64,000 nucleotides of DNA from assembly GCA_053919585.1 (NCBI GenBank), contig CM132815.1; one strand, written 5' to 3'. Shown here piece after piece: positions 9,955 through 64,000 of this stretch. The notes under the pieces are model-generated. The model worked only from the letters and a program-made list of their open reading frames with translations, was not told where the DNA came from and searched no databases. Made by a program: the position numbers and the translations under genes. Every line of letters starts with the position of its first letter. Position 1 is the first letter of the stretch. Source of the DNA: Euprymna scolopes (lineage: Eukaryota).

Positions 9955-9961
9955 ATGTGCT

Positions 9962-16979: not shown

Positions 16980-19900
16980 GGCCGAAACCGAACTTGATGC
17001 TTATTCTTGTATTCTACATGCTAACCTCCAAGCCACTGACTATTCACAGCAAAAAAAATCAATATGATATCGGCATATCCAATGAGCCGATTCCACAAAG
17101 ACCCCCATCCCTAATCAGTAAAAAATATTTCATAAGTTCTGCAGCATCAAACGATAAAATACAGAGATTAAATCAAAATAGTGCAGAACAAAGATCAAGT
17201 GACCATTCCATTAAGCAATCGCAATCTGGGGATGTAGAGTCAACATTAAATCGTTCAGAATTAGATGAAGACATTGATTTTAAATTTCAACGGTTCATAA
17301 AAAATAATCATTCCATCTTGCTCACAAATAAACATGAAAGAAATAATAGAGAAAGTTTCTTGATGAATTCTAGAAAAAGTATACCTGTGTATAGTAATCC
17401 TCTTAGAATGGAGCCAATATCTTTTTCAAAAAGTAGAATCTTAGTAAGTAATAGCATAGAGTCGAAAGAAAGAAATGTAAATAGTGTTAAACCTTTGAGT
17501 AAATTATATTCACAGCCTGGCTCAAATATAAAACATATGGCTATTAGACATAGAAGAGTTTCAGATAAGAATTTAAACAAAAATGTCAATTTGATCGATA
17601 CAGTTACAGATAAAAATCTAATGAATAATGTTTTCAAATCCTCAATCAGTTATTTAAAGAATGATGTAAAAAGTAAAATGTCGAGAATAAAATATATAAA
17701 TGCTGAACAAGATGAACTTTTGAAAAAAACGAAAAACTTTTTAATAAAATCATCAATGAATTTTGATACATTAAATCAAAATGAATTTTCAGATAAAAGT
17801 TTTATTAGCCTTCTTGATCTTAAACGACAGCAAAATCATCCATCATATAATTCGCTATCAATAAATTTCAGCAATTCAACTACGAATGTATATTACAAAA
17901 AGGTGTTTTATTTTTATGCAAACAAAAATGAAAGCAAAGATAATCTTCCAATTATTGTTGATAAAAAGAATTTTCAAAGAAATGGTGAGGTTGGCTCAAG
18001 CAGAAATAAAACCAATACGACCGCGAATCAAAAATTGATTCAATTATATGCACCGACACAAAAGAGAAATAATCACGAAATATCCACAGAAATATATTCC
18101 TTGTTTAAAAAAATAAATAATGATCCAAAGGCTCTTTCTTTACCTCAAAGCGCAACTGTGATATCTACGATAGACCAAGATCAAATCGATGTAAATAATG
18201 ATCAAATGTATAAAAGAAGTTCAAATGAATCAGTTGAACCAAACTATAAAAAAAATTATTCCATGTTAAAGAAAGGAGAGAATTTGACTGACAATTCAAC
18301 ACTTCATAGACATTTTATTCAAAAGAGTCAACCAAAACTCAAGAACAGAACTCCATTTAGTCTTGATAAAAAAACGATGACCTTTGTACAGAACATCTTC
18401 AGCAGCAACAAGACGAAGAAAAACAAAAATTCAGTATTTTCTCCATCTAAAGGAATCGTAACAAGCAATAAAACCATAAGCAAAAATGCTTATCGAGCAC
18501 AAATTATTCAACGTAATCATTCCACAACTTCCAGTATATTTCCTATTCCTGTGCCTTCACTCAAATCATTTCATCCTAATATCAAAAACAAATCTTTTGT
18601 GCCTTCCTTGAAGCCTAAGAGTCACAAAACAAACATTACGACATCAAAACAAACATACAGTCATTTGTCAGCATCTAATGTGCCTATAAATATGAATCAT
18701 GACGCGTTTAAACCATTTTTTAATAATTCCTTTTATACAAAAATTACTAATTCAGACAATAACTATAAATCACTTCAATACAGATCAAAACGGAATATCA
18801 TTTCCAAATTTCACAAAGAAATTCAACCTGTAAATAATTATACTCATATCTTGATCCCATCGGACATGCCCGAAAATTCCAAAGATCAGGTTTTATTAAT
18901 AACAAATAGAGAAAACGTTTATATAAATTCTTCCGCATCGATCTTAACAGTTTTTAAAACAGTTAAAATTATGGAAACAGACAACGCAGATTATGACGCA
19001 TACAATGATTGCTTTATGGAAGAATCAACTGAAATGACAGACGTTACAGAAGATACACCTTTAATGTTAAATGATTCGTATCTAAATGATAACGGAAATA
19101 TTTTATCACAGCATAAAAGCGAATGGATTAACGGAGACGTATCATTAAGCGGCAAAGCAAGAAACATTTTAAAAAACCCGTTCAATTCACGGAAAGTTCC
19201 CTATCCTATTTTTCACACAAACCAATTAAGCAAAATTGAGGTATCCCTGCATAACGAGCCGGCAGCTGGTGCTCTCCAAGAAAATGGATCGATTGGAATT
19301 TCCCTTGTGTGTATCCATGGATCAAGTTTTACGACAACTGAAGAAAACATAAATATTACGTTGAATTGTTCTTCATCTGATAACATTGCTCCGAAATCTA
19401 CGGATATAATAGTATCGCTATACTGTAACCCAGGAACCGAGACGAAAACCGACAGAGGAAAGATTTATGTATCCTTATATTGTTTACCTGGAGAAGGGAC
19501 CAAAGGTGAAGGTTCCACAATTCCAGTGAGTCTTCATTGCACAAGTGAATCCGGACATTCGCCATATAAAGAATTGGTCCACGTATCATTATATTGTGCA
19601 CCTGTTAAAAATGAAACGTCCGTATTGGAGGAACAAAGAAATATAACCAAAAAAGAAACGAAATCTTCGAAAGAATTTGAAAAGGCCACCGTGCCGAGAT
19701 CTCGGCATATCTCTGCAGTTACAAAACAAACACTTTTTGTATCTTTAAAATGTACGACTCGACGTGGTTTTTCTGCTGACGGGAAACGCATAGAAGTATA
19801 TGTGCACTGTATGCCCGGACCGATTTCGGAAACTACATTGACGACGTCTTATAGGACACGTAAAATCAAGGCAAGAGATAAAAACGGACGGAAAAAGATA

Positions 19901-22900
19901 TGTCCATACAGACGATGGAAGAAGAAAAGGAAGAAAAAGAAGAAGAAAAAGAAGAAAATATGCCTAAGTGTACCAGAGAGAAAAGTATTTTCACAAACAG
20001 AGTCAACAAAAAAGCCGATTACGTCACAGCGTTTGACCGAAATCAAAATAAGGAAATCGACCAGATTTTCAAACCTGACAAAATTACCAATTATACTGCC
20101 AACTGAAATTGATTCAAAGTTCCAAACAAAGTTACACCCTGCTATCTTATCAAAACATTTGACGAAAACTTTTATAAAACCATCTACTAGATATGCTCAA
20201 AAGGAAAAGAATGTTACTGATGTTTCAATATTTCCTATAAAGCTTCAGACAAAAATTCTAAAACTGGACAATCGAACTCTGATTGAAGATAAAATGAGGA
20301 CAGCAATTACTTACAAGCCATTAACAAAACGGATACACTTATCAACATCTACGCTGCGTAATGGCGAAGAAGTAAGCATGTCAAAATATAAATCAAGCAC
20401 CGTCAAACCAAGCGTCTATTTATGGAAAACAGTTACTTTGTCACAAATAGAGCGTGACCTGAGAGATATGCTAAGGAAAAAGGTTCGACAAAGTTTTTTT
20501 TCTTTCCTAAAAGAAATACCGACATCAGAAGCTAGTAAATCGATAATTCTAAAAATTGTCAAAGGTTCAGAACACCCAACTCTGAGCACATCATCAAAAA
20601 AGCTATTAGTTACATTCACTGAATCTCCGACATCAGCACTAACAACATTAAAACCGAGAAGCATGCGTGCATTTGTGCCTTTTATAACAAGCGCTGATGA
20701 ATTACAATTTCCTATATCATCTGCGACGTCTATGAGAGTTCTTCCAGTAACAACTATTAAACCATCAACAAAAGAACAAACACCAGTGTCAACTCGAAGA
20801 ACACCATTAAAATATACCACAACTCCATCTTCAATAATCACATATAAAATACTGACAATCACACCAAAACCTATTGCAAATTTTACCTTGTTTAGACCGC
20901 TATCACGTAAAATGAAATTACCATTCTTAAAACCACAAACCGCAACTGTAAGAGAGTCTCTCAAGTTTCCATCATCATCATCATCAGCAGCAGCAGCAAC
21001 AGCAACAGCAACAATCAAACCGTTCATACCAGTGACGAGGGTCCCATCTATTGTGAAAACCGTTTCGAAAGAAATACCATTTCCAAGTAAGGCAAGTCGA
21101 AATGAAACCATACCAATCTGGAGGAAATTTGTCGATTTAAAAAGCGAAACGCTGAAATCAACATTAATAGCAAGTAAAATGCCAGAATTAAGCAGGAAAC
21201 TTGCGCCAAGTTTTACATCAGTGTTAAGTAAAGAATCACAACCCTCTTTGAATATGACATCTTTATCTACATCACCTATGCATCGTATGCTGTCAACACT
21301 AAAATCTAGTTTTACAAATATTTCAAAGGGAAGTCGGATTAAAGAGGCAGAACCGACCTTAGTTTATGCAGATGAAATAGTGCAGAAAGAATATACAACC
21401 AAAGATACCAAACAACAAATGACCGATAAAGATACAGGGATGTTGATTACACCGATGCCCCTACGGGCACCCCGTTACGGAGACACAGTTTATCATTTTG
21501 TTGATTTTGATCAAGTTAAAGAACAAGATTTAAGCCGAGACATATCTCCTGAGAAAGACCAATTTACAGAAAGTTATTTTAACACAACAGAAGCAATGGA
21601 TATGAGAGAAACATCATTCGTTGATCTAACAGATGAGCCAACACCTGATGATACGAAGAAAACCACTTACATTGAGAGTACAGAGGATGTGTCTGATGAA
21701 TACTTGATTGGATCTTCAAGTCCTTATATCAAGAGTGATGAATTCTCAACAATCACGCCCATAGATGACCAGGTGGAATCCTCAACTATATCCAGCCGAT
21801 CAAAAGATCTTTCGACTGATCTTGTTTCACAAGATGACCAGATCTTTTCGAAAGCATCAGCAGATCTAATGGAAGAAGATACATTTACTGGTCAAACTAT
21901 TAGCATCGACGAATCGTTTGTTTTTCTCCCTCTTCCAAGCCCTCCTGCACCAACTGAAATGCTGCACGAAACCTTAAAACCTGAAGAATTTTCCACACCG
22001 ACCACAGATGCTGAAATATATAGCAAGAAAGCTGATTTGAAATTGATTTCAACCCCAAAAGATGCTGTGCCATCAAAGACATCATTCAAAGATTTAGCTT
22101 TTACAGACAGCATGAACAAAACACACGGATCCAAACATACAACGGTAATAAAGGACTTAGAAGAAATGGTATCGGAACCAGTTGAAGAATTAAGTTTCAG
22201 TTCTAAATTGCAATCAAAAGATTATTTCTCATCGACAGTTGAGAAATACAGACGTAAATTAATAGATGATGAAAAGCTTGAATTATCAACAAAAGATGAC
22301 TTTTTAACCAAACTTACTGCCTCAAAAAATGTAACTTCAATTAAAACGAAAGCTGCTAAATCAACTGAACCTTCATTTAAAACAGAAACTGCTAAATCGA
22401 CTGAAACTGCTAAATCGACTGAACCTTCATTTAAAACAGAAACTGCTAAATCGACTGAAACTGCTAAATCGACTGAACCTTCATTTAAAACAGAAACTGC
22501 TAAATTGACTGAACATTCATTTAAAACAGAAACTGCTAAATTGACTGAACTTTCATTTAAATTGGAAACTGCTAAATCGACTGAACCTTCATTTAAAACA
22601 GAAACTGCTAAATCGACTGAACCTTCATTTAAAACAGAAACTGCTAAATCGACTGAATCTTCATTTAAAACAGAAACTGCTAAATCGACTGAACCTTCAT
22701 TTAAAACAGAAACTGCTAAATTGACTGAACTTTCATTTAAAACAGAAACTGCTAAATCGACTGAACCTTCATTTAAAACAGAAACTGCTAAATCGACTGA
22801 ACCTTTATTTAAAACAGAAACTGCTAAATCGACTGAACCTTCATTTAAAACAGAAACTACTAAATCGACTGAACCTTCATTTAAAACAGAAACTGCTAAA

Positions 22901-25900
22901 TCGACTGAACCTTCATTTAAAACAGAAACTGCTAAATCGACTGAACCTTCATTTAAAACAGAAACTGCTAAATCGACTGAACCTTCATTTAAAACAGAAA
23001 CTGCTAAATCGACTGAACCTTCATTTAAAACAGAAACTGCTAAATCGACTGAACCTTCATTTAAAACAGAAACTGCTAAATCGACTGAACCTTCATTTAA
23101 AATAGAAACTGCTAAATCGACTGAACCTTCATTTAAAACAGAAACTGCTAAATCGACTGAACCTTCATTTAAAACAGAAACTGCTAAATCGACTGAACCT
23201 TCATTTAAAATAGAAACTGCTAAATCGACTGAACCTTCATTTAAAATAGAAACTGCTAAATCGACTGAACCTTCATTTAAAACAGAAACTGCTAAATCGA
23301 CTGAACCTTCATTTAAAACAGAAACTGCTAAATCGACTGAACCTTCATTTAAAATAGAAACTGCTAAATCGACTGAACCTTCATTTAAAACAGAAACTGC
23401 TAAATCGACTGAACCTTCATTTAAAATAGAAACTGCTAAATCGACTGAACCTTCATTTAAAACAGAAATTGCTAAATCGACTGAACCTTCAATAAAGTAT
23501 TTTGAAAAAAGAGATGTCAGCGATATTGTTGAAAAATCCCATACAAGTACAACTCGGCCATTTACAGACATTATAAGCGTTAAAGCTAATACTACCACTT
23601 TGCCTACTAGTAATCTGGTGCCAACTGCACAAGGAAGCATGACAACATCTAGACCAACAATATCTGTTTTTACTACTGGAACAAGTTCAAATGAGTCATT
23701 AATTGAAATAGTAACACCTTTACCAGAACTCATATCAGTTCATGAAATACCTACCAAGCATATTACAAATGAATCAGAAGTTGAAATTACACAAAAAAAA
23801 GTATCCAAACAATCTGATATACCGACAACATATTCATTATCGCCTGATAAATCACTTTCTATGGTAAAAACAGAGGAGTCCGAGTCGCGTCTATTTTCCG
23901 TCACAATGTCAAAAACTGATTTGTCGACCGAGTTTTTACCTGTGAATGGTACTAAATCTTATACAACATTAACTGAATCAACCAATATCAGTTTTGTAAC
24001 TACACCATCCACAGTCGATTCGGATGGTCCTCTCAGTACATTATATAGTAAAAATGAAAGTATAACCCCAAGATCTATAGAAACATTACCTTCTAGTGTT
24101 AAATTGGAAATTGCGCCTTCTAACTTAACAAAATCTATACTAAAAAGCGAAACACAATCAGCAGTACCAACATCGACATTACAAACATTAAGCACTGCAG
24201 AAGTTTTATTAAAACCATATACAACACAATTAGTTTCCGATGTGGAAAGTGACTCTACGATTATAAAATCTCTAATCTCAAGTACAGTAAGTAAATTATA
24301 TTCAGATTACAGTAAATTAACAAGTGATTCACCATTTTCATCTTCAAATCTGCTATCAAGTAAGAAAAATGGAAGTGTGCTTAAAACAGATATCTTTACT
24401 TTAGAAAAGACAAGCCAGACTCCAAATGTAAGTATCTTATCAAAAGTGACCAGATCAATTGGAAGCAGCCCCACTGAAGATCAAACGCATGGATTTGAAA
24501 CTGACTTTTTAATTTCGCTAACAAAAACTGGTAGTTTAAAACCTTCATTCTTGACATCAAAACCTGTATCAGTGACCAAACTGACACAAGAATCAAGCCA
24601 AAAAGAAATTCATACAAATCTCACACAGCAAACAGAATCCCCAATAATTCTGATCGATTTGACAGCAAAGCCTTATGAGCAAACTGATCATTTGATGATG
24701 ACAAGTAAAAAAGCAACAATTGGCACACAATTGGCACTTGAACCAACAATGCAAAGCTCAAAATTATTAAGTTTGACCTCATCAGAAAAACTTCTGAGAA
24801 AGGATTTAGACAGTTCAAAAGATCACAAAATAGAAATTGCCTCATCTACTACAACTGACACACCATCAGAATTTGAACAGAAAATGTTGACCACAGATAA
24901 ATCAGAAATCCCTAGTAGTAAGAGAACAAAACTCAGCTCAAAGATGGTACAAGATTTTATATCATCAGAAAAAACTTTTACAAAAGATCAAGATGGTTTC
25001 TCAACTGAAAAAACAGTTTCGAAACATGAAAAATTTCAAACACAAAGAATAACATTGGTTACAGACAAAGCACAAAAAGAAATTCTCGCATCTCTTACAA
25101 ATCAAACGGCAGATCTTATAACTTCAATAACAAAACCTTCTACACAACTTGATAGTTTAATGATTGCGAGTGAAAAATCAGTTTTGAAACCTAAAGTATT
25201 TGAAACGGAAACAAAACCAGTGCCGACTGACAGTTCAGATATAGTTAGCTCTGAACCAACGATCAAAAGCTCAAAATTATTACAAGGTATGACTTCACCT
25301 GAGAAAACTTCAACAAAGGATGTGGACAGTTTAATAGATTTCAAAATAGCAATGACTTCATCTACTGAAACTGCAACTGATGCACAACCAAGTTTTGAAT
25401 GCGATATAATGTGTGCTACACCAGCCGTGGAGGTAGATACTTCTACCACTGCTGAAGATCTATCCATTTCTACTCATATTTTATCTGCAGCTGATCTGGA
25501 TGGTTACCAAAGGCAATTGACGTCGATATCAACAATCACGCAACCAGAAAAGACATTATTTACCAAGACAGTTGATTCAACAACTTCTTTATTAAGTTCA
25601 ACTAAAACACCAACAATCGATAGAAGTGCTACATCAACAGTTAGAGTAGATACTTCTGTGGCCGCTCAGAAACTAACCAGCCAAACTCCTATTTTGAGTT
25701 GGATCGATAGGGAAAAACAGGTGACTGCAATACCACATGAAATGACGTCAGAATCAATAGAAACTGCAACAACCAGAAAAATGACACTGTTTACAAAGAA
25801 AGATGACCCAACGACATCTTTAATAAGTATACAAACGAACGAAGTTGATACAACATCAGATTCAGTCTCTATTCCACAAAAAGTCATGTTAGAAAGCGAA

Positions 25901-28900
25901 ATACAAAATACAACAACTATGATGACAACTAATATAACATCTTTTTTCACATCTAAACAAAAACGCATGCCTACAATGGATGCATTTCAGATGCACATAT
26001 CTGCAACGCCTGATAAAAACGACACTGGTGTTCCTCTGTTTCAAACAACAAAAACTGAGGAAGTTGATACATTTCCAGCTTTAGTCTCTACTCAACAAAC
26101 AGACATGTTAGAAAGCAAAGTACAAACTACAACAGCTATGATGAGCACTAATATAACTGATGCCGAACCAACCAGATCATCAACAACTGAAATGAAACCT
26201 TCACCAACAGAGGAGCTAGTTTTCACACAACTTCCCCTTAATAAAACAGTCTCACTACTGTCTTCACATCAAAGCATTTTAAGTAATGCTAGCATGCCAG
26301 TTGATAGAATACATACTAAAGGTCAAACACATCCATTCAAAACTGACTTTGCTGACTCAACAACAATTACAGATAGTTTTAAACCTTCAGTATCCACATC
26401 AACACCTCTAAGTAATATTAGCTTATCAGTTGATACCATTCTTCCTGAAGAACAAACATATTCAGTCAAAACTGATTTTGTAGACTCAACCATTTCAGGT
26501 AGTTTAAAACCAGTATCAACAACTCTAAGTAAGACTAGTTCGTCAACTGATAGTATTCTCATCCAAGAACAAACAAATAGATTCAAGACTGACGTCAAAA
26601 CAGATAGTTCTAAACCTTCGGTAGTCACTTCAACACCTCTACATAATTCTAGTTTGTCAGTTGATAGCATTTTCACTCAGGGACAAACACATACATTCAA
26701 AACTGACTTGATAAATTTCTCAACAAGAACAGATAGTTTTAAACCTTCAGTATCTACATCAACACCTTTAAGTAATGCTAGCTTATCAATTCATATTGAA
26801 TCGTCATCTCATAGTCCCAAACCATCAGTATCCACATCAAAAATTAGATTGACCAAAATGACAAGTCAATCAACAAATACAGACAGTTTTAAACCTTCAG
26901 TATCAACACCTTTAACTAACACTAGCTGGTCTGTTGATACTATTCCCATTCAAGAACAAGCACATTCATTCAAAACTGACCTTGTCGATTCTTCAACAAA
27001 TGCCGACAGTTTCAAACCTTTAATCAGCACATTAATACCTCTATCAAAAGATACAGTAACTAAAATGACAAGGGGATCAACACTAAAAACTGAACTAATA
27101 GACGCAACTACAAATGATTTTACAGATCAAATAGTAAAGAAAGAATTTCACAAAAAATTAACAAAAGAAATTCAGAGTTCAACGACTCTTGAAGGTTACT
27201 TTACATCTTTAAAGTTACAAAATATCACATACGGTTCAACAACACAATCTGCTGAACCTAGTAGTTTAATTTTAACTAAAAAAGACTTTTCAGAATATGA
27301 ACTCTCAAAAACAGAGAAGAAAACACTAACCTCAGGTGAAACAGATTCATTTAGCGCTGAACCAACAATTCCTCATTTAAAACTGTTACAACGTCCGATG
27401 TCATCTGAAAGAACTCCTACAATAGACCAAAATGGTTTAATGGACCAGAAGCTTTCGACAGTTGAGACGACAACAGCGTTCAATGTGAAGCAAAGCTCGC
27501 CATGTGACGTTATGTGCGCTCCACCAGCAGTGGAGGTTGATACTTCGACCACGGTTGGAGGACTCTCTATTCTTACGACTGCCTTAAGCACGGTTGATTT
27601 GGTTGATGTAGAAAAGCAACCAGTTAAAGTGATACATGAAAGCTCATCCAGATTAAAGTATGCATTAACGACTCCATCATCACCAGAAAAAACAACAACA
27701 GGGAAAATTGAATCAACAAAATCTTTGTTAAACCCAACTGTAATAACAGAAACGAAGGCAGGTAAAGTAACTGACATTGATCAAACAGAAACAATCCCGC
27801 TTGAAAGAGAAACTCTTCCAAAAGAAAATCAATATATGTTAAGTAAAGCTGATATATCTACATCTGCACTGACAAGAGATCATGAGTCAGAGAAAGATGC
27901 AACTGAAATCTCTAGTCAACAAATGTTACCTACTGAAACAGACGATAGGGCAAGGCAACTGGAGCGTAAAATAGCTGCAATAGATGCATTTAATGAGAAT
28001 CGAACCAAAGTTCCTGCATTTGAAACAGTAAAAGATGTGTCAACAATTCAACACGACAGAAATGCGTCATTACAGCTTTCCTTTCAACCAACACAATCGG
28101 TTGATACGACCTCATCTGCATCACAAATAGAAAACAAAATATCAGATACAACACTGGCCACTAACATAACTTCTTTATCTACATCTGGTGAAACACTGAC
28201 TCACATTACTGACACACAACTGAGCAGCGAAATAAAAACTTCACCAACAGGCAGGCAATTTGTCACACGAAAATCATTTCCCAATAAAACATTCCAACTA
28301 ACTACTGGGATAAGCATTTCACCTACCGCCCCAATGTCGCCTGAGACGATTCTTATTAAGGAAGATAGGCACGTGACCAAAACAGATTTTGTAGATTCGT
28401 CAACAAGAAATGATGGCATTCACACAAGTCAAACCATAATTTCAGCTTTAAAAGATGATGCGTTAGAAAAACAAACGGAAATTCCAACTTCTACGCAGAC
28501 AAGTAAATCTTTAGTTACACCTGAACAACTAAACATTGAAACTGAACCGACCATGCCAATCATGGCTCAAACCTCCTCAACTGATTCATCAACACAAATA
28601 TCAATTATTAATGAAACATTCGCATTAAACATCACAAAGTCATTTGATTCGATTCTCACTCAAGAGCAAACGCATTCATCTCAACCTGACTTTGTAGTTT
28701 CATCGGTAAAGGAAGACAAGCTAAAAGCTTCAAAACTTATGTCAACAGATATGTTTACCAAAATGACGACTGAATCAACTCTGGAAACTAAACTACCAGA
28801 CTCCAAACATCTGTCAACTGATATAATAACCAACATGACAGAATTGACTTCTATTTCCACATCAAAGTCTCTGCAAGCCAACGGAGTAAGAACCCTAAGA

Positions 28901-30104
28901 AAATTAACCTCGGAAGCTCAAACACCAGATTCAACTATAATAATGCGTGATTTCACTGATCAAACAGTGAAGGAAACCCAAATAGATGAGAAACGAATTC
29001 CACCTTCAACAAGTGAAATTGATATCAAATCTACAATGATTCAGAAGTCTCCTTCAACTGATCCTGTGCACATGACAGAAATACAGTCACAAGCAAGAAA
29101 ACAGAATTTATCGGACAAAAGTATGTATCAAGTTGAAAAGAAATTAACAACTGTACCTGAATCACGTGAACCTCGGTTATCTCATTTGTACACTGACCGA
29201 ATAGTTTCAGAAAGCAAAGCAATGAATGAGACATTAAAATGGGATCCAATGGTTTTTGCATTTTCTTCAACTGAAATGATTCGTTCATCGAGTCGAGGTG
29301 GAATGAGCTCTACACCATTCGAAACAACAATGGTTAAAATGACTACAACGACACCGGCTGGAGGAAAATTAACGGGAATTTTAGAAAAGAAAATGAAAGC
29401 ATCGACACTTAGCACAGATATTACGGATTCTTTAATAAGTGGTTCGACTTTTCTAGCAAGAGACAAAAGAGTAATTAATCAAACCAAAGCACATATTTCT
29501 CAGATTAGTTTACCAGGCACAACCGATCAAACATTGTTGATGCTGCCTGAAACAAGCACAACTTTACCAGTGGGAGAATCGTCATCGTCGTCATCATCAT
29601 CATCAACATCATCTACATTATCATCATTGACAACAAAAACTGGAGTGGAGCCTGGTATGCTTTCACTCACAGATCCATATACTGATCCATCATCAGTAAA
29701 ATTTGTGCCAGAAACCAAAAAGCTACAGACGACAACAACAACAACAACAGACACGAGATCATCATCATCGTCATCAACAATTGATATAAATCTTTTCAGC
29801 GATAAAGATGAAACAAAAACTCAAAGTCAAGAATCTCATATTTTGGAAGAATCAGTATCAAAAGAAGGAATCACTTTAATTCCACGAGTGACAAAAGTTG
29901 AATCAGAATTGAGAAAAGAACTAAAAGACATGAAACAAGAAATGTTGGAAGCGGAAAAAGATTTTATACAAACTGAGTCTGACAAACATATCGCAACGAC
30001 GAAACGTAGCAAAATCTTTTTTGATCCGAGGAAAACTGATTTTATATCTACTCTTAAAACTGATGATTACTTTGCAGATCTAACACAGGCAACACCTGAA
30101 ACTG

Positions 30105-30144
<40 letters not shown>

Positions 30145-33100
30145 GGCATTAAGTCCTGATTGTGATGTATTATGTGCAACACCTGCAGTGGAAACTGACA
30201 CAACGGAAACTGTACCAATTATTTCACAACTGATTACCACATCTACTACAGACAAAGATTTCGAAAAATACTTACAAAAAAGCGATCAGGGGAACATAAC
30301 TCTTTCAACTTCTAAAAGTTTTAGTACTGACAGTAAATTGGCCAGATTTCTCAGCACGGATGCTGATTTGAAATTAATTAAGATGTTTAAAATATATGAA
30401 GAATTTATGACTTTACCTAGAACAAGTAAATCCTTTCTTACGAGATCGAAAATGAAACTGCCTGCCACAGAGAAAATGCCTTTTATCACAACACGCCAAG
30501 ATGTATTACCGTCCATGGAAAAACAACGTTCTAGTATATCCATTTCAGCTGATGAGTTAGTTACTGCAAAAGAATATTTAACAATCCCAGAAGATACAAA
30601 ACCTTTTGCAACCCCAAAAATGTTATTTTTCAAGTCCAGATTATTACCCGCAGGTAAATTAACTCGAAAAGACAAACTTCTTACTTCTTCATCTTTGAAT
30701 GATAAAAAAGAATTGTATGTTACAAGTGACTATCAAGTGCCAACAAGTCAATACAAATTAATTTCTGCAGAGGAAAAATCAGAATCGACTGAAACACAGG
30801 AATTTGAGTTGAAAGATAAAGTCATTTCGACTTTGAGATCATCTTTAAAGAGTCTTGAAGATAGAAAGGTTTCGCCAATAAACGTTACTGGAAAAATGAC
30901 CGAGAGTACATTTACTAAAATGGATGAGGTCAGAAAAGTTGAGCCGATGTTTAAAGACACAAGATTTACTGAGTTGAACTTTTCTTTACCAACATATGAC
31001 AGTGGTTTTAGCCAAACTGTTCCTTATGAAACACCAAAAACAAAGGAAATTTTAACAAGAGAAACATCAAAAGACGAGAGGGAAATTGATGCACGAGAAA
31101 AGAATGAAGGCGAAATTTTATGGTCGGATCAAACAGTGGAAAACAAACAAAAAGAAGATCAATTTTACCGAATGAAAAAAGTGTATGAATTATTTGGAAA
31201 AGATGATAAAATAATTCATCTAAAAAACGAACTGGATAATGAAATGACGACAAAAAAAGTTGATGTGCACGAAAGATCAACTTTGTATACTCATGAAGAA
31301 GACATGAAAACAACCAAATTTGAGAAAGAGAAAGAGAATGTCACTAAAATTCCAGTTGTTCAAACATTTAAAGATGACTCAACACGTGAGAAAGACAAAA
31401 ACGAGTCTTTGGTGTCTACTTTGCAGACAATGAAAACCAATGGAATTCAGTTGAAGAAAAAAACAGAAAATCCAACTTCTATGCACACGGCTAAATTGTC
31501 ATCTTTAGTTGAATCTGAACAACCAAACATTGAGACTGAACTGATCACAAAAATCAGGGATCAAACTTCCCAAACTGGCTTATTGACACAAACATCATTA
31601 CTTAATGAAACATTCCCATTGACTTCAGCTAAAATAACAAAGTCAACTATTATTGAAGACAGAACACATTCATTTCAAACTAACTCTGTAGTTTCATCAG
31701 CAAAAGAAGACAGACTGAAATCTTCAATATCTACGCCAAAACATGTATCAACAGATAGAATAACCCAAATGATGACAGAAGCAATTATAAAAACTCAAAA
31801 ACCAGAGTCAAAACTTATGTTAACAAGTACAATGACCAACACGACAATAGTTTCAAGTCCGGAAACTTTAATGCCAGAATCAAAGCATCTATCAACAGAT
31901 ATGATGATAGACTCAACTCTGAAAACAGAAATACCAGAAACAATGATATATGATTCTAAACAAATGCCATCTTCTAAAACGGCTGAAACATTGAAAACTG
32001 TACAGACAAAGGTATTGCCTACTTTATTCAAGACGCAGACACCTGACATAAGTTCATCCAATAACAAAGTTTATGATACGTTATATGAATTACCAGTTCC
32101 AGAAGAGCAAATAAGAACCATAACTCAGTCAATTATGCCTGAATTTTCATTTAAAACAACATACACAGAAAAAAGTAATGTTGCAATGCAACAAAAAGAC
32201 AAAATAACTTTCCCTAAAATATTAACAGAAAAAATCGTAGATACAACTCAGATTGGAGATATTGAAGAAACCCAAACATATATTACACAAAGACATGAGC
32301 TAACATCAACAATAAAACCTTATAATTTTACTGATAATTTAATAATATCAAAAGAGAAAGAATCTTTAGAACGTGAAATATCAGAACGAGATAGTGAACC
32401 ATTAATTAGAGACAAAGATGATCTTAGCTCTGCTGTAACAATGCCGAGCACAACGCTATTACAAGATTTAACACCATCAAAGAAAATTGCTACAATGGCT
32501 AAAGAGTATCCAACAGATCAAAAGATAGAAACGCCATTGACTTCCAAATCAACTGATGCACAACCAGATTTTGAATGTGATTTTCTATGCGCTACACCAG
32601 CAGTAGAGTTAGATACTTCTGCTGTGACTAGAGGAGCGTCCATCCCAAGTATCACATCAGATAAAGGTGATTTATCTGATTTAGAAAAATTGGAAACTAC
32701 AATGACACATGGTAAGACATCTAAATTAATAGATACATTAACAACACTGATGGGTGGGAAAATGATTTCTTCATTTAAAAATGTCAGCTCAAAAATATCT
32801 CAGCTAGAGGTTGTGGTGAAGCAAACGGCAACAGCAACTGATGCTTTTGAACCGCATTTGTCTGAGACTCATGGAGAGAATTTCACTGAACTTTCAGTAA
32901 TTAAAGCAGTAAAAGATGACTCAACAATACAACTAGATACAAACAAATCTTGGTCGTCTACAACTCCAACGACAAAAATCAAAGATGGTTTTACTGATTT
33001 AGATAAGAAAACAGCGACAGTAAAGGTAGATGCTCCTACTGTGGTTGAAGGAATGCCCATCCGAAGTATCACGTCAGATAAAGTTGATTTGTCTGATTTA

Positions 33101-36100
33101 AAAAAGGAACCAAATACAATAATACATGAAAAAACATCTAAATTAATAGATACATTAACAACAGAAAAAATGATTCCTAAAATGAATGTGAGCTCAACAT
33201 CATCTCAGACAGAGTTTACAACAAAACAAACAAAGCAGAAACTATCTGTAATCGATGATTTTAAAACAGATTCATTTTTAATCCAAGAGAGTTTTACAAA
33301 AGATCAAGCAACTCAATCATTAAAAGATGATTCCATATATCAACAAGTAAAAAACGAATCTGTCTACATCCCAAACATGCTGTCTACATCCCAAACAACA
33401 GAGTCCAGTGACATTGATGCGATTCCACTTTTAATTTCCACGTTACAAACAGATATGGGAAGAAGGAAAACAGAAAATATTACTACTATACAAACAAACA
33501 ACATCTCATCTTTAGTCACCCCTGGCAAAACAGACATTAATAGAACCCAGATTGAACTGACAACATCACCCACTACTCAAATAAAAACTTCTCTGATTGG
33601 TAAAAAAGTTTTCACAGAAAAATCATTTCTTTTTGACACATTTCCATTGATTTCACAAAAGATGATGTCATCTCACATAACAAAGTCATTTGATTCAAAT
33701 TTCACTGAAGAACGAACACATGTTTCGAAAAGTGACTTTGCTGTTTTATCATTACAAACAGACAGTTCGAAATATTTAATATCGACATCGACACCTCTGT
33801 CAATAACCAACATGACAACAGAATCAAGTCTGAAAACCCAAATGCCAGACTTAAAACTTCTGTCAACAGATACAATGACCGAAGTAAAAACAGAATCAAG
33901 TCTGAAAACTCGAATGCCAGACTCAAAACTTCTTTCAACAGATACAATCACGAACGTGACAGCAGAATCGAGTCTGAGAACTCGAATGCCAGACTCAAAA
34001 CTTCTTTCAACAGATACAATCACGAACGTGACAGCAGAATCAAGTCTGAGAACTCGAATGTCAGACTCAAAACTTCTTTCAACAGATACAATCACGAACG
34101 TGACAGCAGAATCAAGTCTGAGAACTCGAATGCCAGACTCAAAACTTCTTTCAACAGATACAATCACGAACATGACAGCAGAATCAAGTCTGAGAACTCG
34201 AATGCCAGAATTAAAACTTCTGCCAACAGATACAATCACGAACGTGACAGCAGAATCAAGTCTGAGAACTCGAATGCCAGACTCAAAACTTCTTTCAACA
34301 GATACAATCACGAACGTGACAGCAGAATCAAGTCTGAGAACTCGAATGCCAGACTCAAAACTTCTTTCAACAGATACAATCACGAACGTGACAGCAGAAT
34401 CAAGTCTGAGAACTCGAATGCCAGACTCAAAACTTCTTTCAACAGATACAATCACGAACATGACAGCAGAATCAAGTCTGAGAACTCGAATGCCAGAATT
34501 AAAACTTCTTTCAACAGATACAATGACCGAAGTGAAAACAGAATCAAGTCTGAAAACTCAAATGCTAGGATTAAAACTTCTGCCAACAGATACAATGACC
34601 AAAGTAAAACAAGAATCAATTCTGAAAACTCAAATGTCAGAAGTAAAACTTCTATCAACAGATACAATGACCGAAGTAAAAACAGAATCAAGTCTTAAAA
34701 CTCGAATGCCAGAAGTAAAATTTCTGTCAACAGATACAATCACCAATATGACAGTAGAATCAATGCTGAAAACTCGAATGCCAGACTCAAAACTTCTCTC
34801 AACAGATACAATCACGAACGTGACAGCAGAATCAAGTTTGAGAACTCGAATGCCAGAATTAAAACTTCAGCCAACAGATACAATGACCAAAGCGAAAACA
34901 GAATCAAGTCTGAAAACTCGAATGCCAGAATTAAAATTTCTGTCATCAGATACAATGACCAAAGTGAAAACAAAGTCAAGTCTAAAAACCCAAATGCCAG
35001 AAGTAAAACTTCTGTTAACAAATGCAATCACCAATATGATGACAGAATCAAGTGAAAAAACCGAACAACCAACATCAGCTAAAATGACATTCAATATCTC
35101 TGATATGAAAGTCAAGAAATATATTACCACAAAACAGTTGCCAGATTTAAAAACGACTGAATCAATTCCTAAATATCCACACAAAAAAGATTTCAATGAA
35201 AGTGTTATGACACGATTACTGTCAACCGAATTTCAATCACAAACACCAGAAATCAAATTATCTGATGAAGCCGTGTATCCTGCATCATTGATTGTAGGTA
35301 AGCAAATTACAATGACAACACAATTAGTTATACCTGAATCTTCATCTCAAAAAAAGTACACAACAAAAAGTAGTGTTTTCATGCAAAGAAAAGACAAAAC
35401 AACTTTGCCAAAAGAAAGAATATTTGACACAACTCAGATTGGAGACACTCAAACGTATGTTATGCAAACTCATGAGATGACATCAGGAGTAAAACCTTAT
35501 AGTCTTACTGATAGTTTTATAATATCAAAAGAGAAAGAATTTACAGACGGTGAAATATTAGAAAGAAAAGATATGCATGACTCTGCAACAACGATGTTGA
35601 GCACAACATTTTCCCAAGATTCCACATCATCAAGGAAAGCTGCTACAATGACTGACGAAACTTCAATGGATCAAAAGACAGAAATGCCGTTGATTTCCAA
35701 ATCAACCGATGCACGGCCAGATTTTGAATGTGATTTTCTATGTGCTACTCCAGCAGTAGAGTTAGATACTTCGACTGTTGCTCAAGGAGTGTCCATCTCA
35801 AGTATCACCGCAGATAAAATTGGTTTAACTGAGTTGGATCAGGATCAAACAACAACACAACATAAAAAGACATCTAAATTAATGGATATGTTAACAGAGA
35901 TATCAACAACAAAGACGTCAGCTATTGCTACAATGATAAACAGTTCAACATCACCGACAACAAAGTCTTTTACGGATCAAATTGAGCAGAAAACGCAAGG
36001 CAAAACAATATTTGAAACGCACTTGTTTGAAACCCAGAAAACGAATTTCACCAAACTTGTAGCAATTGAAACATTAGATGATGATTCAACGCATCTTATA

Positions 36101-39100
36101 GATAGAAATGTATCTGTAGAGACTAGCTCTGTAGCATCGGAATTCGATGATGTTGATGAAATCCCAACTCTAGTTTCAGAGCAGCATACAGGTAGGGAAA
36201 CGAAATCTCCGATGAAAACCACAAATATTTCCGCTTTATTATCACCAGAAAAAACACGCATTCACAAAACTGAGGCTTTACACACAATGCCCATTGCTCT
36301 GCAAACAGAAGGTTTTTCAACTGGCAAACAAGTTATAAAAGAATCATTCCATGATGAAACATTCCGATCGACTTCAACAGCAGCAGATATATTTACTGCA
36401 GATACTGAACCATCCACGATGAGCACTATTTTAAGAAAAGTTGATTTGGAGAGGAAAGAAATGATGACGATGCATGAAACGTCAGAATTATCTGATACAC
36501 TAACAACAACAAGAAAGACTGTAGAAAGAAAAACGAAAGAAAACAGAACATCTACAGAACAAGACACTTCAACAATTCCTCAAACAGATTTTGTAACAAT
36601 TGCAACAGAACAGAAAATTATTGCAGTGGATGATTCTGAGAAAGGTTTTTTAGTTACAAAAGAAGCGAAATTTACCAAGCCATCAGCAACTCAAATACTC
36701 AAAGATGTTGCAGCAATAACACAGGATGCAGACAAATCATTGCAGTCCACTTCCCAACCAACAAATACTGATGGTGTTGGTACAATTCCGACCGTGATTT
36801 CAACTCAACAAACAAATAGGTTAGAAAGTGAAACACAAAGTAAAACACCTGCGACTCACATATCGTCTTTAGTCACATCCCAAAAAACACACCTTATTAA
36901 AAGTGAATATGAATTGACTGCACCACTCTCCACTCAAATACGAACTTCTCCAATTGCCGAGCAAACTTTAAAAGAAAAATCATTTCTTAATGAAACATTG
37001 CCATTGATTTCCGCTAATGTCACAAAATTATTTGATGTGAGTCTACCTCAGGGACAAACAACCAAAATGGACATTGTAGGTTCATCAGCAAAAATGGATA
37101 AACTAAAATCCTCAATATCTGCATCGGAACACCTAGCAACAAGTACAATGAGCCAAAGGTTGACAATTTCAACTATGGAAACGCCAATACTAGAATCAGA
37201 ACTTTTCTCAACAGATACAATGACCAATATTATAACAGAAACTGAAATACCGCAACGAGTATCAACTTCCAAACCTTTATCAACAGGTACAATAACGAAT
37301 GCAACAACAGTATCAACCCTAGGAATGTTAACAGCAGAACCAACGGTAATGACGTATGATTTAACAACTAAAAAAACAGAGAAAGATGTTATGAGAAATA
37401 TTACCAAACAGATGATGTCTACGAAACCAGCAGTATATCCATCAAAAAAGGAATCTGATGAAACTGATATGGCAAGTGTACAGACACTTGAATTCCAAAC
37501 ACTTTCACCTGACATCAGAATAGAGGATAAAACAGTTTCTCATACATCAGGTAAATTATCAATCATACAAGAACTGACAACCACAAAAGGTGAACCAAGT
37601 ATACCTGAATCTTTGCCTCCAAAACTTCTGCAGACAGATACAACAACTAACATATCAAGAGAATTAAGTACGGTAACTCGAATGCTTGAATCAAAACATC
37701 TATCGACTGATATGATGACCAATATGACGACAGAATCAATTTTGAAAACTCAGAAAACAGAACCAAAATTTCTCTCAACAGGTACAATGACCAACATGAC
37801 AACAATGACAACTCTAGAAACTCTAATGCCAGAATCCAAACTTCTGTCAACAGATACAACGACTAACGTGATGACAGAATCCACTTTGGAAATTAAGAAA
37901 CCAGAAGCAAAAGTTCTGTCAATAGGCACAACGACGAACATGACAACAGTTTCAAGTCTGGAAACTCTAATGCCAGAATCCAAACGTGTATCAACAGATA
38001 TGATGACGAATATAATGACAGACTCAACTCTGAAGACAGAAATACCAAAAACAATAATATATAATGCTACTAAACAAATGCCATTTTCAAAAACGGCTGA
38101 AACTGCAAAGATATTGTCTACTTTATTCAAAACACAAGCACCTTACATTAGATTATCTGATAAAAAAGTTTATCATACGTCATATGAATTACCAGTTCCA
38201 GAAGAGCAAATAAGAACCACAACTCAGATTAGAGATATTCAAGAAACCCAAACATATATTACACAAAGACATGAGCTAACATCAACAATAAAACCTTATA
38301 ATTTTACTGATAGTTTAATAATATCAAAAGAAAAAGAATCTTTAGAACGTGAAATATCAGAACGAGATGGCAAACCATTAGTTAGAGACAAAGATGATTT
38401 TAGCTCTGCTATAACAATGCCGAGCACAACGCTGTTACAAGATTTAATGCCATCAAAGAAAATTGCTACAATGGCTAAAGAGTATCCAACAGATCAAAAG
38501 ATAGAAACGCCATCGACTTCCAAATCAACTGATGCACAACCAGATTTTGAATGTGATTTTCTATGCGCTACACCAGCAGTAGAGTTAGATACTTCTGCTG
38601 TGACTAGAGGAGCGTCCATCCCAAGTATCACATCAGATAAAGGTGATTTATCTGATTTAGAAAAATTGGAAACTACAATGACACATGGTAAGACATCTAA
38701 ATTAATAGATACATTAACAACAGAAAAGATTATTTCTATAAGTAATATAAGCTCGGCATCATCTCAGACAGAATTTACAACAAAACAAAGAAAGAAGAAA
38801 ATATCTGTAATCGATGATTTTGAAACGGATTCATTTTTGATGCAAGAGAAGTTTACAAAAGATCCAGCAACTCGAGCATTAAAAAGTGACTCCACATTTC
38901 AACAAGTAAAAAACGAATCTTTCCTTTCTAAGTCTCAACCAACAAAAATCAGTGATGTTGATGCACATTCGATCTTTATTTCAACTTTACAAACTGATGT
39001 GTTAGGAACAACAGCACAAAATACAACTTCTATGCAATCAACTCTGAAAGTTCCAATACCAGAATCAAAACTTTTGTCAACAGATAAAATGACCAAGATA

Positions 39101-63100: not shown

Positions 63101-64000
63101 CCGTCAGTTACACAAAATAAAACCCATGTTACAGGCACATTGGATGTGCTTAGTTCTCAACCATCAATTACAGAAAATAAAACATATGTCACAGGAACAT
63201 TGGATACACATAGCACACAACCATCAGTTACAGAAAGTACAACATCTATCACGGACACATTTGGTTTGTTTAGTACTCAACCATCACTTTCAGAAAATAA
63301 AACACATGTTAATGACACATTGGATGAGTTTAGTGCTCAACCCTCAGTTACAGAAAGTAAAACACATGTCACGGACACATTTGGAACACTTAGTACTCAA
63401 TCAACGGCACAAATATCGACTGAATTAGATATCCTGATTCCAACAATTCACACGCCAATGACTGAGCATGAAAGTTTATCTACTGACAAAACCGTTTCCA
63501 AAAGTGAGATATTTATTTCAGAAAGACATTTCACAGACACATTGGATATGCTTAACACTGCACCAGAATTACAAATTCCGATTTCAACTTTACAAACTCC
63601 AACAACGGAACAAGAAAGTTTGTTCACTGATAAAGAGGTTTCAAAAAGTGAGGTATCCGTTTCAAAAAAGAAAACACGTGTCACAGACACATTAAATACA
63701 ATAAGCACTAAATCAACGTCACAAATCTTAACACTTTTACAAGATACGATTTCTACAGTTCAAGCTCCAATATTCAGACGAGGAAAATTTTCAACAGTTA
63801 AACCCATTTTGGAAAGAGTGATATCTGCGGCAGTCATAACGACACCAATAACAGAAACTTTGGATAGAACTAGCATGAAATCAACAGAACAAATGTCCAC
63901 AGAATTACAAGATCTGGTTACAACACAACAGTTGGCGTTAGAACAAGAAAGTTTATCCAGTGAAAAAAACGTTTCAACTGAAATGCTAATGACAGACACA
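16980..64000 (+). CDS. Giant single coding exon (3' partial) of a probably secreted mucin-like T/S/E/K-rich protein, >=15,600 aa
   Basis: Polypyrimidine+CAG acceptor (ttttttttcag|G at 16979/16980). Frame reads PKPNLMLILVFYMLTSKPLTIHS (ATG 16997). Manual translation of many lines from 17 to 64 kb stays in this frame without stops and ends ...EKNVSTEMLMTDT at 64000. The ORF track has no + ORF in this frame, as expected only if there is no stop before the window end. All measured repeat units are multiples of 3. Confidence 0.92.
19235..19812 (+). repeat. Cryptic 19-aa (57-nt) protein repeat, I-x-V-S-L-x-C, 9 units
   Basis: Cys codons at 19310, 19367, 19424, 19481, 19538, 19595 (each +57), then 19751 and 19808 (+57). 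The first unit has Asn at 19253 (-57). Confidence 0.85.
22352..23490 (+). repeat. 36-bp coding minisatellite, ~30 copies (TETAKSTEPSFK)
   Basis: Unit acagaaactgctaaatcgactgaaccttcatttaaa, near-perfect. Confidence 0.95.
25363..26480 (+). repeat. Long intra-exonic duplicated block (copies at ~41670-42520 and ~44165-45020)
   Basis: Near-identical sequence, e.g. cagccaaactcctattttgagttggatcgatagggaaaaacagg at ~25678, ~41725 and ~44482. The ORF track shows matching antisense peptides. Confidence 0.9.
32250..32745 (+). repeat. Duplicated block, second copy at ~38220-38720
   Basis: Near-identical, including QPDFECDFLCATPAVELDT. Confidence 0.85.
33810..35050 (+). repeat. 72-bp coding tandem repeat, ~17 copies (AESSLRTRMPDSKLLSTDTITNVT)
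   Basis: Direct reading. Diverged units also occur at ~31.8, 37.6-38.0 and 40.0-40.2 kb. Confidence 0.92.
48660..49460 (+). repeat. ~800-bp duplicated block, second copy at ~57490-58290 (offset 8832)
   Basis: Antisense ORFs 49033..49383 and 57865..58215 are almost identical. Confidence 0.9.
50625..52040 (+). repeat. 165-bp coding tandem repeat, ~8.5 copies (55 aa)
   Basis: ESLTIDKTVLKDGLSITEIKPRVTDALDTLTTTPMIQISTELPDIISTLQTSTDK. Confidence 0.92.
58540..61170 (+). repeat. 168-bp (56-aa) coding repeat array with a 504-bp higher-order duplication
   Basis: Diagnostic variant gtttggaaagatgg at 60005 and 60509 (offset 504 = 3x168). Confidence 0.85.
62280..63400 (+). repeat. 60-bp coding tandem repeat, ~18 copies (KTHVTDTLDVLSTQPSVTES)
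   Basis: Units align vertically in the 60-nt lines. Confidence 0.92.

What the first reader, a model, noticed from the sequence alone, without database searches (positions are those of the whole stretch)
19235..19812. Cryptic 19-residue I-x-V-S-L-x-C repeat domain: candidate beta-solenoid with a cysteine ladder
Seen: IEVSLHN, IGISLVC, INITLNC, IIVSLYC, IYVSLYC, IPVSLHC and VHVSLYC at exact 57-nt intervals, a 33-aa insertion, then LFVSLKC and IEVYVHC again 57 nt apart. The 12-aa linkers are polar/Gly-rich and divergent, so the repeat is nearly invisible at DNA level and probably old. Inference: alternating hydrophobic strands stacking in register with aligned Cys. It is the only clearly folded-looking module in the window and sits where gel-forming mucins have VWD/C8/TIL multimerisation domains. 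I do not recognise it as a known family.
Basis: partly seen in the sequence, partly recalled or inferred. Interest (0 to 1): 0.8.

Follow-up and report, generated by a model that had tools for sequence, protein, structure and literature searches.

The report
Orphan cysteine-bearing 19-residue repeat in giant mucin
Near the start of a giant mucus-type protein (over 22,000 residues in one exon) of a mollusc lies a real, old, nine-unit repeat of a short greasy strand ending in a cysteine, with no known relatives; its fold and its role, perhaps stacking or cross-linking, are still unproven.

Summary
Nine 19-residue units with the core [ILV]-x-[IV]-S-L-x-C sit exactly where stated. Seven are in perfect 57-nt register, then comes a linker 33 aa longer than the others, then two more units.

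They lie in one stop-free exon of 22,295 codons (16946 to about 83,830 in extended coordinates). The protein is Thr/Ser-rich.

The repeat is selected at protein level. In the core, codon positions 1+2 are 62% identical and position 3 is 35% (random 26%). Ser uses both TCN and AGT codons. Linkers share 11% of residues but keep their length.

No relatives were found in Pfam, PDB sequences, 1.84 billion protein representatives, the ESM Atlas, or the animal's own genome.

The beta-solenoid reading is neither confirmed nor refuted. AlphaFold2 places one strand on units 1 to 8, but pLDDT is only 39 to 43, and ESMFold2 gives 32.

New context: 16.5 kb downstream on the same strand lie exons for NIDO, VWD (with a GDPH motif), EGF and a membrane-span-like stretch. 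The gene therefore looks MUC4-type, not gel-forming, which makes the repeat a membrane-distal head module. Linkage in one transcript is not shown.

The same DNA occurs in at least five closely related organisms. Deeper conservation could not be tested. The scan's only other note on this repeat is this same stretch, not other DNA.

The parts
16980..64000 (+). Giant coding exon, Thr/Ser-rich and mucin-like. The stop-free frame runs from 16946 past the window end to about 83,830 in extended coordinates (22,295 codons).
   Evidence: Stop-free stretch found and extended. A polypyrimidine tract plus cag|G acceptor sits at 16977-16979. A consensus donor CAG|GTAAGT sits at the far end, and both are phase 1. 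Indels listed between organisms A and C are +3 and +6 inside the frame, and 2 nt at 16966 just upstream of the acceptor.
16997..17050 (+). Candidate start codon with a short hydrophobic, signal-peptide-like stretch (M-L-I-L-V-F-Y-M-L-T-S). Alternatively, the exon is joined in phase 1 to an unseen upstream signal-peptide exon.
   Evidence: Read directly from the sequence. No RNA evidence for the 5' end: X1 contigs start at 17245.
19133..19153 (+). Possible degenerate unit 0 (G-D-V-S-L-S-G), 34 aa before unit 1.
   Evidence: Read directly from the translation. Weak.
19235..19633 (+). Units 1 to 7 of the 19-residue repeat: a core heptad [ILV]-x-[IV]-S-L-x-C plus a 12-aa polar linker with P at position 9 and G at positions 10 or 12.
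   Evidence: AlphaFold2 places one strand on each core, at low confidence.
19598..19732 (+). Long 45-aa linker between the cores of units 7 and 8, which is 33 aa longer than the others. It is charged, carries two N-x-T sequons, and is predicted helical in part.
19733..19846 (+). Units 8 and 9 of the repeat (L-F-V-S-L-K-C and I-E-V-Y-V-H-C).
19901..19963 (+). Polybasic tract (R-R-W followed by a K/R run) bracketed by two cysteines (aa 986 and 1006 of the open frame), directly after the repeat module.
   Evidence: Encoded by a GAA/AAG low-complexity stretch seen by Tandem Repeats Finder at 19917-19958.

Best explanation
Shown: this is a lineage-restricted protein module of nine (perhaps ten) 19-residue units. 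It lies about 750 residues into the single giant exon of a Thr/Ser-rich mucin-like protein of a mollusc. Each unit has an amphipathic beta-strand-type heptad with I, V and L at positions 1, 3 and 5, C at position 7, and S plus Tyr/His on the other face. A 12-residue polar, probably glycosylated, linker follows and begins with a Pro-Gly turn. Selection keeps the heptad and the linker length, but not the linker sequence.

Inferred (gene context): the gene continues downstream into NIDO, VWD (GDPH), EGF and membrane-span exons. That would make it a MUC4-type tethered mucin, with this module near the membrane-distal head.

Inferred (mechanism): the units stack as a regular beta-arch or solenoid-like ladder of 19 residues per rung. 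The hydrophobic face is buried and the eight cysteines are aligned. They may be paired rung to rung (2-3, 4-5, 6-7, 8-9; the long insertion falls between pairs), or they may be used for links between molecules. Either way the module would give the mucin a stiff, covalently stabilised head or cross-linking point.
For: Reality and selection:
- Exact 57-nt register of seven units plus two.
- 0 of 20,000 shuffles reach 2 motif hits against 7 observed.
- Core codon positions 1+2 are 0.62 identical and position 3 is 0.35, with random at 0.26. Ser is encoded by TCC, TCG, TCA, TCT and AGT, and Leu by five different codons.

Coding and expression:
- The open frame has 22,295 codons.
- Contigs of a probable RNA run cover 17245-21999 almost identically.
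- Four polyA RNA-seq runs of another study hold 24 to 41% of the words of 18800-20300.

Regular fold (indirect):
- Linker length is invariant in 7 of 8 linkers, although linker residues are only 11% identical. In-frame indels are tolerated elsewhere in the exon between close species.
- Column profile: hydrophobic at positions 1, 3 and 5, Cys at 7, Pro at 9, Gly at 10 or 12, and a weak hydrophobic position at 13, as expected for a return strand.
- AlphaFold2's best 250-aa model puts a strand on the cores of units 1 to 8, none on unit 9.
- The non-significant Foldseek list of that model is dominated by parallel beta-helices.
- The ladder cysteines number eight, an even count.

Gene context:
- NIDO, E 2.8e-15, plus a second-half exon.
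- A VWD exon with a GDPH motif matching FCGBP, MUC2 and MUC5AC VWD domains, E 2.4e-13.
- EGF above its Pfam cut-off, and a 24-residue hydrophobic stretch.
- The consensus donor at the end of the giant exon shows that the protein continues.
Against: - No confident structure: AlphaFold2 without an alignment gave pLDDT 43 (250 aa) and 39 (units 1 to 7). In the second model only five units are strands. ESMFold2 gave pLDDT 32 and the dimer job gave no answer.
- Only four to five inward-facing positions per 19-residue rung is few for a stable solenoid core. Sequons inside one strand (unit 3) and Ser/Thr-rich linkers suggest heavy glycosylation.
- No orthologue beyond about 4 to 6% DNA divergence could be examined, so long-term conservation of the cysteines is untested. 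Repeat DNA in organism C is only slightly, and not significantly, better kept than its surroundings (word share 0.37 against 0.28).
- The neighbouring N-terminal region evolves neutrally (3 synonymous, 13 non-synonymous changes).
- One polyA RNA run of the same species shows no reads on the exon.
- Linkage of the giant exon to the NIDO/VWD exons is not shown. The splice phases (1, then 0) require at least one unseen exon in between.
- The Pfam AMOP model does not match at the expected place.
Confidence: 0.45

Rival explanations
1. A stickers-and-spacers cross-linking array without a fixed fold. Each heptad is a short aggregation-prone beta sticker carrying one free cysteine, often next to Tyr or His. 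Flexible glycosylated spacers separate the stickers. The stickers would make disulfides between molecules, or oxidative Cys/Tyr/His cross-links, or cross-beta contacts that knit the mucin heads into a gel or fibre.
For: - Low pLDDT in all predictions.
- Polar linkers rich in Gly, Pro, Thr and Ser.
- One cysteine per unit in an otherwise cysteine-poor protein, whose other cysteines are also periodic short motifs.
- Position 6, next to the Cys, is Tyr or His in 6 of 9 units.
Against: - A flexible array has no obvious reason to keep every spacer at exactly 12 residues after the spacer sequences have randomised.
- The Pro-Gly turn right after the Cys, and the weak hydrophobic position 13, point to a defined chain reversal.
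- The self-association job gave no support, although that is no evidence against.
Confidence: 0.3
2. A decaying remnant of an ordinary 57-nt tandem array inside a repeat-rich mucin exon, with no function of its own. The apparent motif is what is left of the founding unit.
For: - The exon is full of tandem arrays of 36, 60, 72 and 165 to 168 nt.
- The adjacent N-terminal region evolves neutrally between close species.
- The repeat DNA is not significantly better conserved than its flanks.
Against: - Third codon positions of the core are near random (0.35), while positions 1+2 stay at 0.62. Ser is kept through TCN and AGT codons.
- Linker sequences are at chance level, yet the cores and the spacing are kept.
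- Neutral decay would erase core and linker alike, and would add indels.
Confidence: 0.12
3. A divergent member of a known solenoid family: a leucine-rich repeat with a cysteine ladder as in Listeria InlJ, or a curli/FapC-type or antifreeze-type beta-solenoid.
For: - The period of 19 residues is close to the shortest LRRs (20) and to curli repeats (19 to 23); this is my own knowledge.
- FapC, RTX and ice-binding folds appear in the non-significant Foldseek list.
- A cysteine ladder in an LRR is on record (Bublitz 2008, listed in the references of PMC3196904).
Against: - No sequence match to any Pfam model or PDB chain, even with a repeat profile at E up to 10.
- The 2-2-2 spacing of I, V, L and C does not fit the LRR core pattern LxxLxLxxN/C.
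- There are no Gln/Asn/Ser-Gly motifs of curli, and none of the Thr-Cys-Thr or Ca-binding Gly-Asp motifs of antifreeze or RTX solenoids.
Confidence: 0.03

Closest known systems
MUC4-type membrane-tethered mucins (giant repeat exon followed by NIDO, AMOP, VWD with a GDPH cleavage motif, EGF-like domains and a membrane span)
   Same: A single giant Thr/Ser-rich exon with a unique N-terminal part before the tandem arrays. Downstream on the same strand lie NIDO, a VWD exon with GDPH, EGF and a hydrophobic span.
   Different: The AMOP model does not match. One-transcript linkage is unproven. Proline is low (5 to 7%). To my knowledge human MUC4's N-terminal unique region has no cysteine-bearing 19-residue repeat. 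The exon also carries periodic C-D-x-x-C-A-T-P-A-V nodes.
Cysteine ladder of the InlJ leucine-rich repeat (Listeria; Bublitz et al. 2008, J Mol Biol 378:87, cited in PMC3196904 and PMC9525666)
   Same: One cysteine at a fixed position of a short repeat of about 20 residues that forms one strand per rung. In the known case the cysteines stack as a buried, reduced ladder.
   Different: No sequence similarity and a different hydrophobic spacing. Our period is 19 residues against 21, and the linkers are far more polar. The fold here is not established.
Beta-arch functional-amyloid solenoids (curli CsgA, FapC) and 19-residue Ca-bound solenoids of bacterial ice-binding adhesins
   Same: Imperfect repeats of about 19 to 23 residues, each thought to give one strand-turn-strand rung. 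Extracellular, self-associating surface material (own knowledge). FapC appears in the weak Foldseek list.
   Different: No shared motifs. This is a eukaryotic mucin context. It has cysteines, not Gln/Asn ladders or Ca sites. No significant structural or sequence match.
CysD and other cysteine-containing interruptions of mucin PTS domains
   Same: Cysteine-bearing elements set within or beside a glycosylated mucin domain, thought to mediate non-covalent or covalent cross-links.
   Different: CysD is a globular domain of about 100 residues with ten cysteines. Here there is one cysteine per 19-residue unit and no similarity.

Membership tests
MUC4-type tethered mucin | Very large single exon encoding a Ser/Thr-rich repetitive domain | tested here: met
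   22,295 stop-free codons. Thr plus Ser is about 25 to 36% per 500-aa block. Many tandem arrays.
MUC4-type tethered mucin | NIDO domain C-terminal of the repeat domain | tested here: met
   PF06119: 57.3 bits, E 2.8e-15, profile positions 3-97 at L012:6405-6869. The second half (profile 99-180) is at L013:945-1340.
MUC4-type tethered mucin | AMOP domain between NIDO and VWD | tested here: not met
   A Cys-rich exon lies at the expected place (L013:2568-3083), but Pfam gives no AMOP hit at E up to 10. A whole-genome AMOP scan finds other loci and not this one. PDB search is blank.
MUC4-type tethered mucin | VWD domain with a GDPH autocleavage motif | tested here: met
   The exon L013:4779-5069 contains W-G-D-P-H-F. 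PF00094 scores 21.9 bits for this exon alone (cut-off 22.9). phmmer against the PDB hits the FCGBP VWD at E 2.4e-13, and also MUC2 and MUC5AC.
MUC4-type tethered mucin | EGF-like domain(s) and a membrane span at the C-terminus | tested here: inconclusive
   One EGF exon scores 23.6 bits against a cut-off of 21.5. A 24-residue hydrophobic stretch followed by Arg lies in L017:9622-9837, read by eye. No topology predictor was run.
MUC4-type tethered mucin | All parts in one transcript | not tested
Phases 1 and 0 need an intervening exon.
Leucine-rich repeat (including the InlJ-type cysteine ladder) | Core pattern LxxLxLxxN/CxL in units of 20 to 30 residues | tested here: not met
   The conserved positions are 1, 3, 5 and 7 of a 19-residue unit. 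No LRR model in Pfam matches at E up to 10.
Beta-solenoid (generic fold class) | Parallel in-register stacking of one rung per repeat | tested here: inconclusive
   Strands are predicted on the cores of units 1 to 8, but pLDDT is 39 to 43. No Foldseek match has E below 1. Constant rung length is compatible with this fold.
Gel-forming mucin N-terminal assembly (VWD/C8/TIL) | D-assemblies N-terminal of the PTS domain | tested here: not met
   No Pfam domain in 16946-22000. The only VWD found is C-terminal of the giant exon.

The most novel reading that the evidence does not exclude
The module is a previously unseen fold: a 19-residue-per-rung beta-arch solenoid held by a column of rung-to-rung disulfides. 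It would be a cephalopod-lineage invention serving as the polymerising or anchoring head of a giant MUC4-type mucin, and so an independent solution to mucin cross-linking that does not use von Willebrand D assemblies.
Probability: 0.2. Interest if true: 0.6.

Novelty: new variant of a known kind. Interest (0 to 1): 0.4.

Why it matters
Mucins and other giant surface glycoproteins are usually described as disordered brushes with a few borrowed globular domains. Here a short repeat born inside such an exon has been kept by selection as a strand-plus-cysteine unit of fixed length. That pattern is what one expects when a new structural or cross-linking element arises from tandem repeats.

If it folds or cross-links as proposed, it would show how a lineage builds a mucus network or stiff head without the classical D-domain machinery. 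It would also give a small, expressible piece (about 200 residues) of an otherwise intractable protein of more than 22,000 residues for biochemical study.

If it does neither, it remains an ordinary lineage-specific repeat in a fast-evolving mucin.

Tried and rejected
- Pfam scan of the module and both flanks: nothing.
- phmmer of 250 aa against 1.84 billion representatives: 0 hits at E up to 0.001.
- PDB sequence search with the module, and with a two-unit profile (A1): only chance rows with E above 1.
- ESM Atlas feature search: no usable hit, with recognition 998, below the 2300 reached by most known families.
- Own-genome six-frame search: only the locus itself. The next hits (E 0.001 to 10) are satellite arrays on C12 and C27 whose 51/57-nt period mimics the repeat. 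At nucleotide level they match the units no better than shuffled controls (0.39 to 0.49 against 0.40 ± 0.03, maximum 0.49) and in inconsistent phases, so an origin from that satellite is rejected.
- AlphaFold2 twice without an alignment: pLDDT 43 and 39.
- Self-association job with two copies of units 1 to 7: 'no answer', score 0.00, pLDDT 32. This is evidence neither for nor against binding.
- Laying reads. A polyA RNA run of the same species had zero depth on the exon. The table of differences was truncated, so the organism-C orthologue could not be read through the repeat. Only one difference there was listed, 19336 A>G, which is synonymous.
- Word shares as a proxy for constraint: 0.37 in the repeat against 0.28 around it, within sampling noise.
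- Pfam AMOP at the expected exon: no hit.
- Literature searches for cephalopod or cuttlefish MUC4/NIDO mucins found nothing on this gene.

Full report
**The observation**

The + frame that begins at 19235 reads nine heptads at 19235, 19292, 19349, 19406, 19463, 19520, 19577, 19733 and 19790. The first seven are exactly 57 nt apart. Units 7 and 8 are separated by a 45-aa linker in place of the usual 12. Units 8 and 9 are again 57 nt apart.

The core reads [ILV]-x-[IV]-S-L-x-C. Unit 1 ends in Asn and unit 9 has Y-V for S-L.

- The strict motif occurs seven times in the whole 22,295-residue open frame, all of them here.
- None of 20,000 shuffles of the local 250 residues gave even two hits.
- The hydrophobic autocorrelation peaks at lags 19 and 38.
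- Tandem Repeats Finder sees nothing here even at score 30.

**Is it coding, and is it selected?**

The repeat lies in one stop-free stretch from 16946 to the window end. With downstream DNA fetched from the same contig, the stretch runs 22,295 codons to extended coordinate 83,833.

- A polypyrimidine tract and cag|G acceptor lie at 16977-16979.
- A consensus CAG|GTAAGT donor lies three codons before the stop.
- Both are phase 1.

In a relative about 96% identical (organism C), the indels listed inside the frame are +3 and +6 nt. A 2-nt indel lies at 16966, just upstream of the acceptor.

Evidence that the exon is transcribed:
- Contigs of a small run that is probably RNA cover 17245-21999 nearly identically.
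- Four polyA RNA-seq runs of another study hold 24 to 41% of the words of 18800-20300.
- One polyA run of the species has no reads there, so expression is tissue-restricted or low.

Among the nine units, codon positions 1+2 of the core are 62% identical. Position 3 is 35%, against 26% expected by chance. The conserved Ser is encoded by TCC, TCG, TCA, TCT and AGT, and Leu by five codons. Linker residues are 11% identical. This is the signature of an old duplication series with purifying selection on the heptad. It is not a decaying DNA repeat.

**Anatomy of a unit**

- Positions 1, 3 and 5 are I/V/L in all units, and position 7 is Cys in 8 of 9.
- Position 4 is Ser/Thr in 8 of 9, and position 6 is Tyr or His in 6 of 9.
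- Position 9 is Pro in 5 of 9. Positions 10 and 12 are each Gly in 4 of 9.
- Position 13 is weakly hydrophobic.
- The remaining positions are T/S/E/G/K-rich, and the module carries five N-x-S/T sequons.

So one face of each strand is greasy and ends in Cys. The other face carries Ser and Tyr/His. The chain leaves each strand through a Pro-Gly turn.

Seven of eight linkers have exactly 12 residues, although their sequences have randomised. In-frame indels are tolerated elsewhere in the exon between close species. This argues that unit length itself is constrained, as in a regular stack.

The ladder cysteines number eight. The single long insertion falls between units 7 and 8, which is between putative pairs 6-7 and 8-9. 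That pairing is an inference only.

**Fold**

- AlphaFold2 without an alignment gave pLDDT 43 for 250 aa, with a strand on the cores of units 1 to 8 (none on unit 9) and a helix in the insertion.
- It gave pLDDT 39 for units 1 to 7 alone, with strands on only five units.
- ESMFold2 gave pLDDT 32, and the two-copy job returned 'no answer'.
The weak rows are mostly parallel beta-helices (TBCC, FapC, SufBD, pectin methylesterase, RTX, ice-binding proteins). This shows only what shape the low-confidence model took.

The solenoid reading therefore stays a hypothesis. It is compatible with the anatomy but unsupported by any confident prediction.

**Relatives**

No relatives turned up:
- Pfam.
- PDB sequences, with the module and with a two-unit profile.
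- 1.84 billion protein representatives.
- ESM Atlas.
- The animal's own 5.9-Gb genome.

The only sub-threshold own-genome hits are satellites of similar period. At nucleotide level they are no closer to the units than shuffled controls.

The same DNA is held by runs of at least five other coded organisms and by a 'mollusc metagenome' run. Word shares imply roughly 2 to 6% divergence. The share in the repeat (0.37 in organism C) is not significantly above that of its 1.5-kb surroundings (0.28).

The only difference listed inside the repeat is synonymous. In the N-terminal region, 3 of 16 listed differences are synonymous, which is the neutral expectation.

**Gene context (new)**

On the same strand, 16.5 kb past the donor of the giant exon, lie:
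- two NIDO exons (E 2.8e-15, and the second half of the model);
- a Cys-rich exon that Pfam's AMOP model does not recognise;
- a VWD exon with the GDPH motif, matching the VWD domains of FCGBP, MUC2 and MUC5AC (E 2.4e-13);
- further VWD-like exons;
- an EGF exon;
- an exon with a 24-residue hydrophobic span.

This is the order found in MUC4-type tethered mucins, which also have one giant repeat exon (own knowledge).

The phases (donor 1, NIDO acceptor 0) require at least one unseen exon, and no RNA link was obtained.

If the link holds, the repeat module sits near the membrane-distal head of a tethered mucin. It does not sit at the place of the D-assemblies of gel-forming mucins.

**Rest of the exon**

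- After the module comes a polybasic tract bracketed by two cysteines.
- Then come about 21,000 residues of Thr/Ser-rich arrays with periods of 12, 20, 24 and 55 to 56 aa.
- These arrays are punctuated by 18 near-identical C-D-x-x-C-A-T-P-A-V nodes every 700 to 1,800 residues.

Earlier notes of this scan on the giant exon and on the C-x-x-x-C nodes agree with what I see.

**Verdict**

This is a real, selected, orphan repeat module. My best reading is a regular beta stack with an aligned cysteine column serving as a stabilised head or cross-linking point (confidence 0.45).

The rivals are:
- a non-folded sticker-and-spacer cross-linking array (0.3);
- a functionless relic (0.12);
- a divergent known solenoid family (0.03).

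It is a new variant within a known kind, namely lineage-specific repeats of mucins. It is of moderate interest until orthologues or a structure show more.

Noticed in passing
L012:6405-6869, L013:945-1340, L013:2568-3083, L013:4779-5069, L013:6405-6572, L014:1252-1476, L016:9298-9549, L017:9622-9837 (36 to 90 kb past the window end, + strand): Exons for NIDO (two), a Cys-rich AMOP-like piece without a Pfam hit, VWD with a GDPH motif, EGF and a membrane-span-like stretch. This MUC4-type C-terminal half is probably part of the same gene as the giant exon.
   Followed up: partly
window 25400-61400 and on to extended coordinate about 76,500: 18 near-identical C-D-x-x-C-A-T-P-A-V-E/D-x-D nodes, 700 to 1,800 residues apart. 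They hold all the cysteines of the exon past residue 1006. They mark a super-repeat of about 900 residues.
   Followed up: partly
window 19901-19963: A run of about 16 Lys/Arg residues bracketed by two cysteines, right after the repeat module. It could be a convertase-type cleavage loop held by a disulfide, or a polyanion-binding patch. It is encoded by a GAA/AAG low-complexity stretch where contigs of public runs break.
   Followed up: no
window 17042-17448: Between organism A and the roughly 96% identical organism C, 13 of 16 listed substitutions are non-synonymous, which is the neutral expectation, while the frame is kept. The Ser/Asn/Lys-rich N-terminal 750 residues look unconstrained in sequence.
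   Followed up: partly
G000:C27:4379254-4400159 (L004, L006) and G000:C12:151259654-151276079 (L002, L003, L005, L007): Large satellite arrays of 51 to 57-nt period that stay open in several frames and give Cys-periodic pseudo-proteins. They are chance look-alikes of the repeat in six-frame searches.
   Followed up: yes
window 9924-11109 and 15410-15968 (+ strand): Reverse-transcriptase-like open frames (a Y-A-D-D motif) and very high read depth at 16000-16900 in DNA runs. These are retroelement fragments directly upstream of the giant exon, which makes any 5' exon hard to find.
   Followed up: no
window 20416-21111, 22222-23733, 50344-52179, 53557-55026, 56551-57807 (- strand): Long antisense open frames (231 to 611 aa) inside the giant exon. 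They coincide with tandem arrays and A-rich sense codons, so they are most likely by-products and not genes.
   Followed up: no
extended coordinates 87030-87887 and 88957-90379 (L011): Two further short-period satellites in the interval between the giant exon and the NIDO exon. They are open in all three + frames.
   Followed up: no
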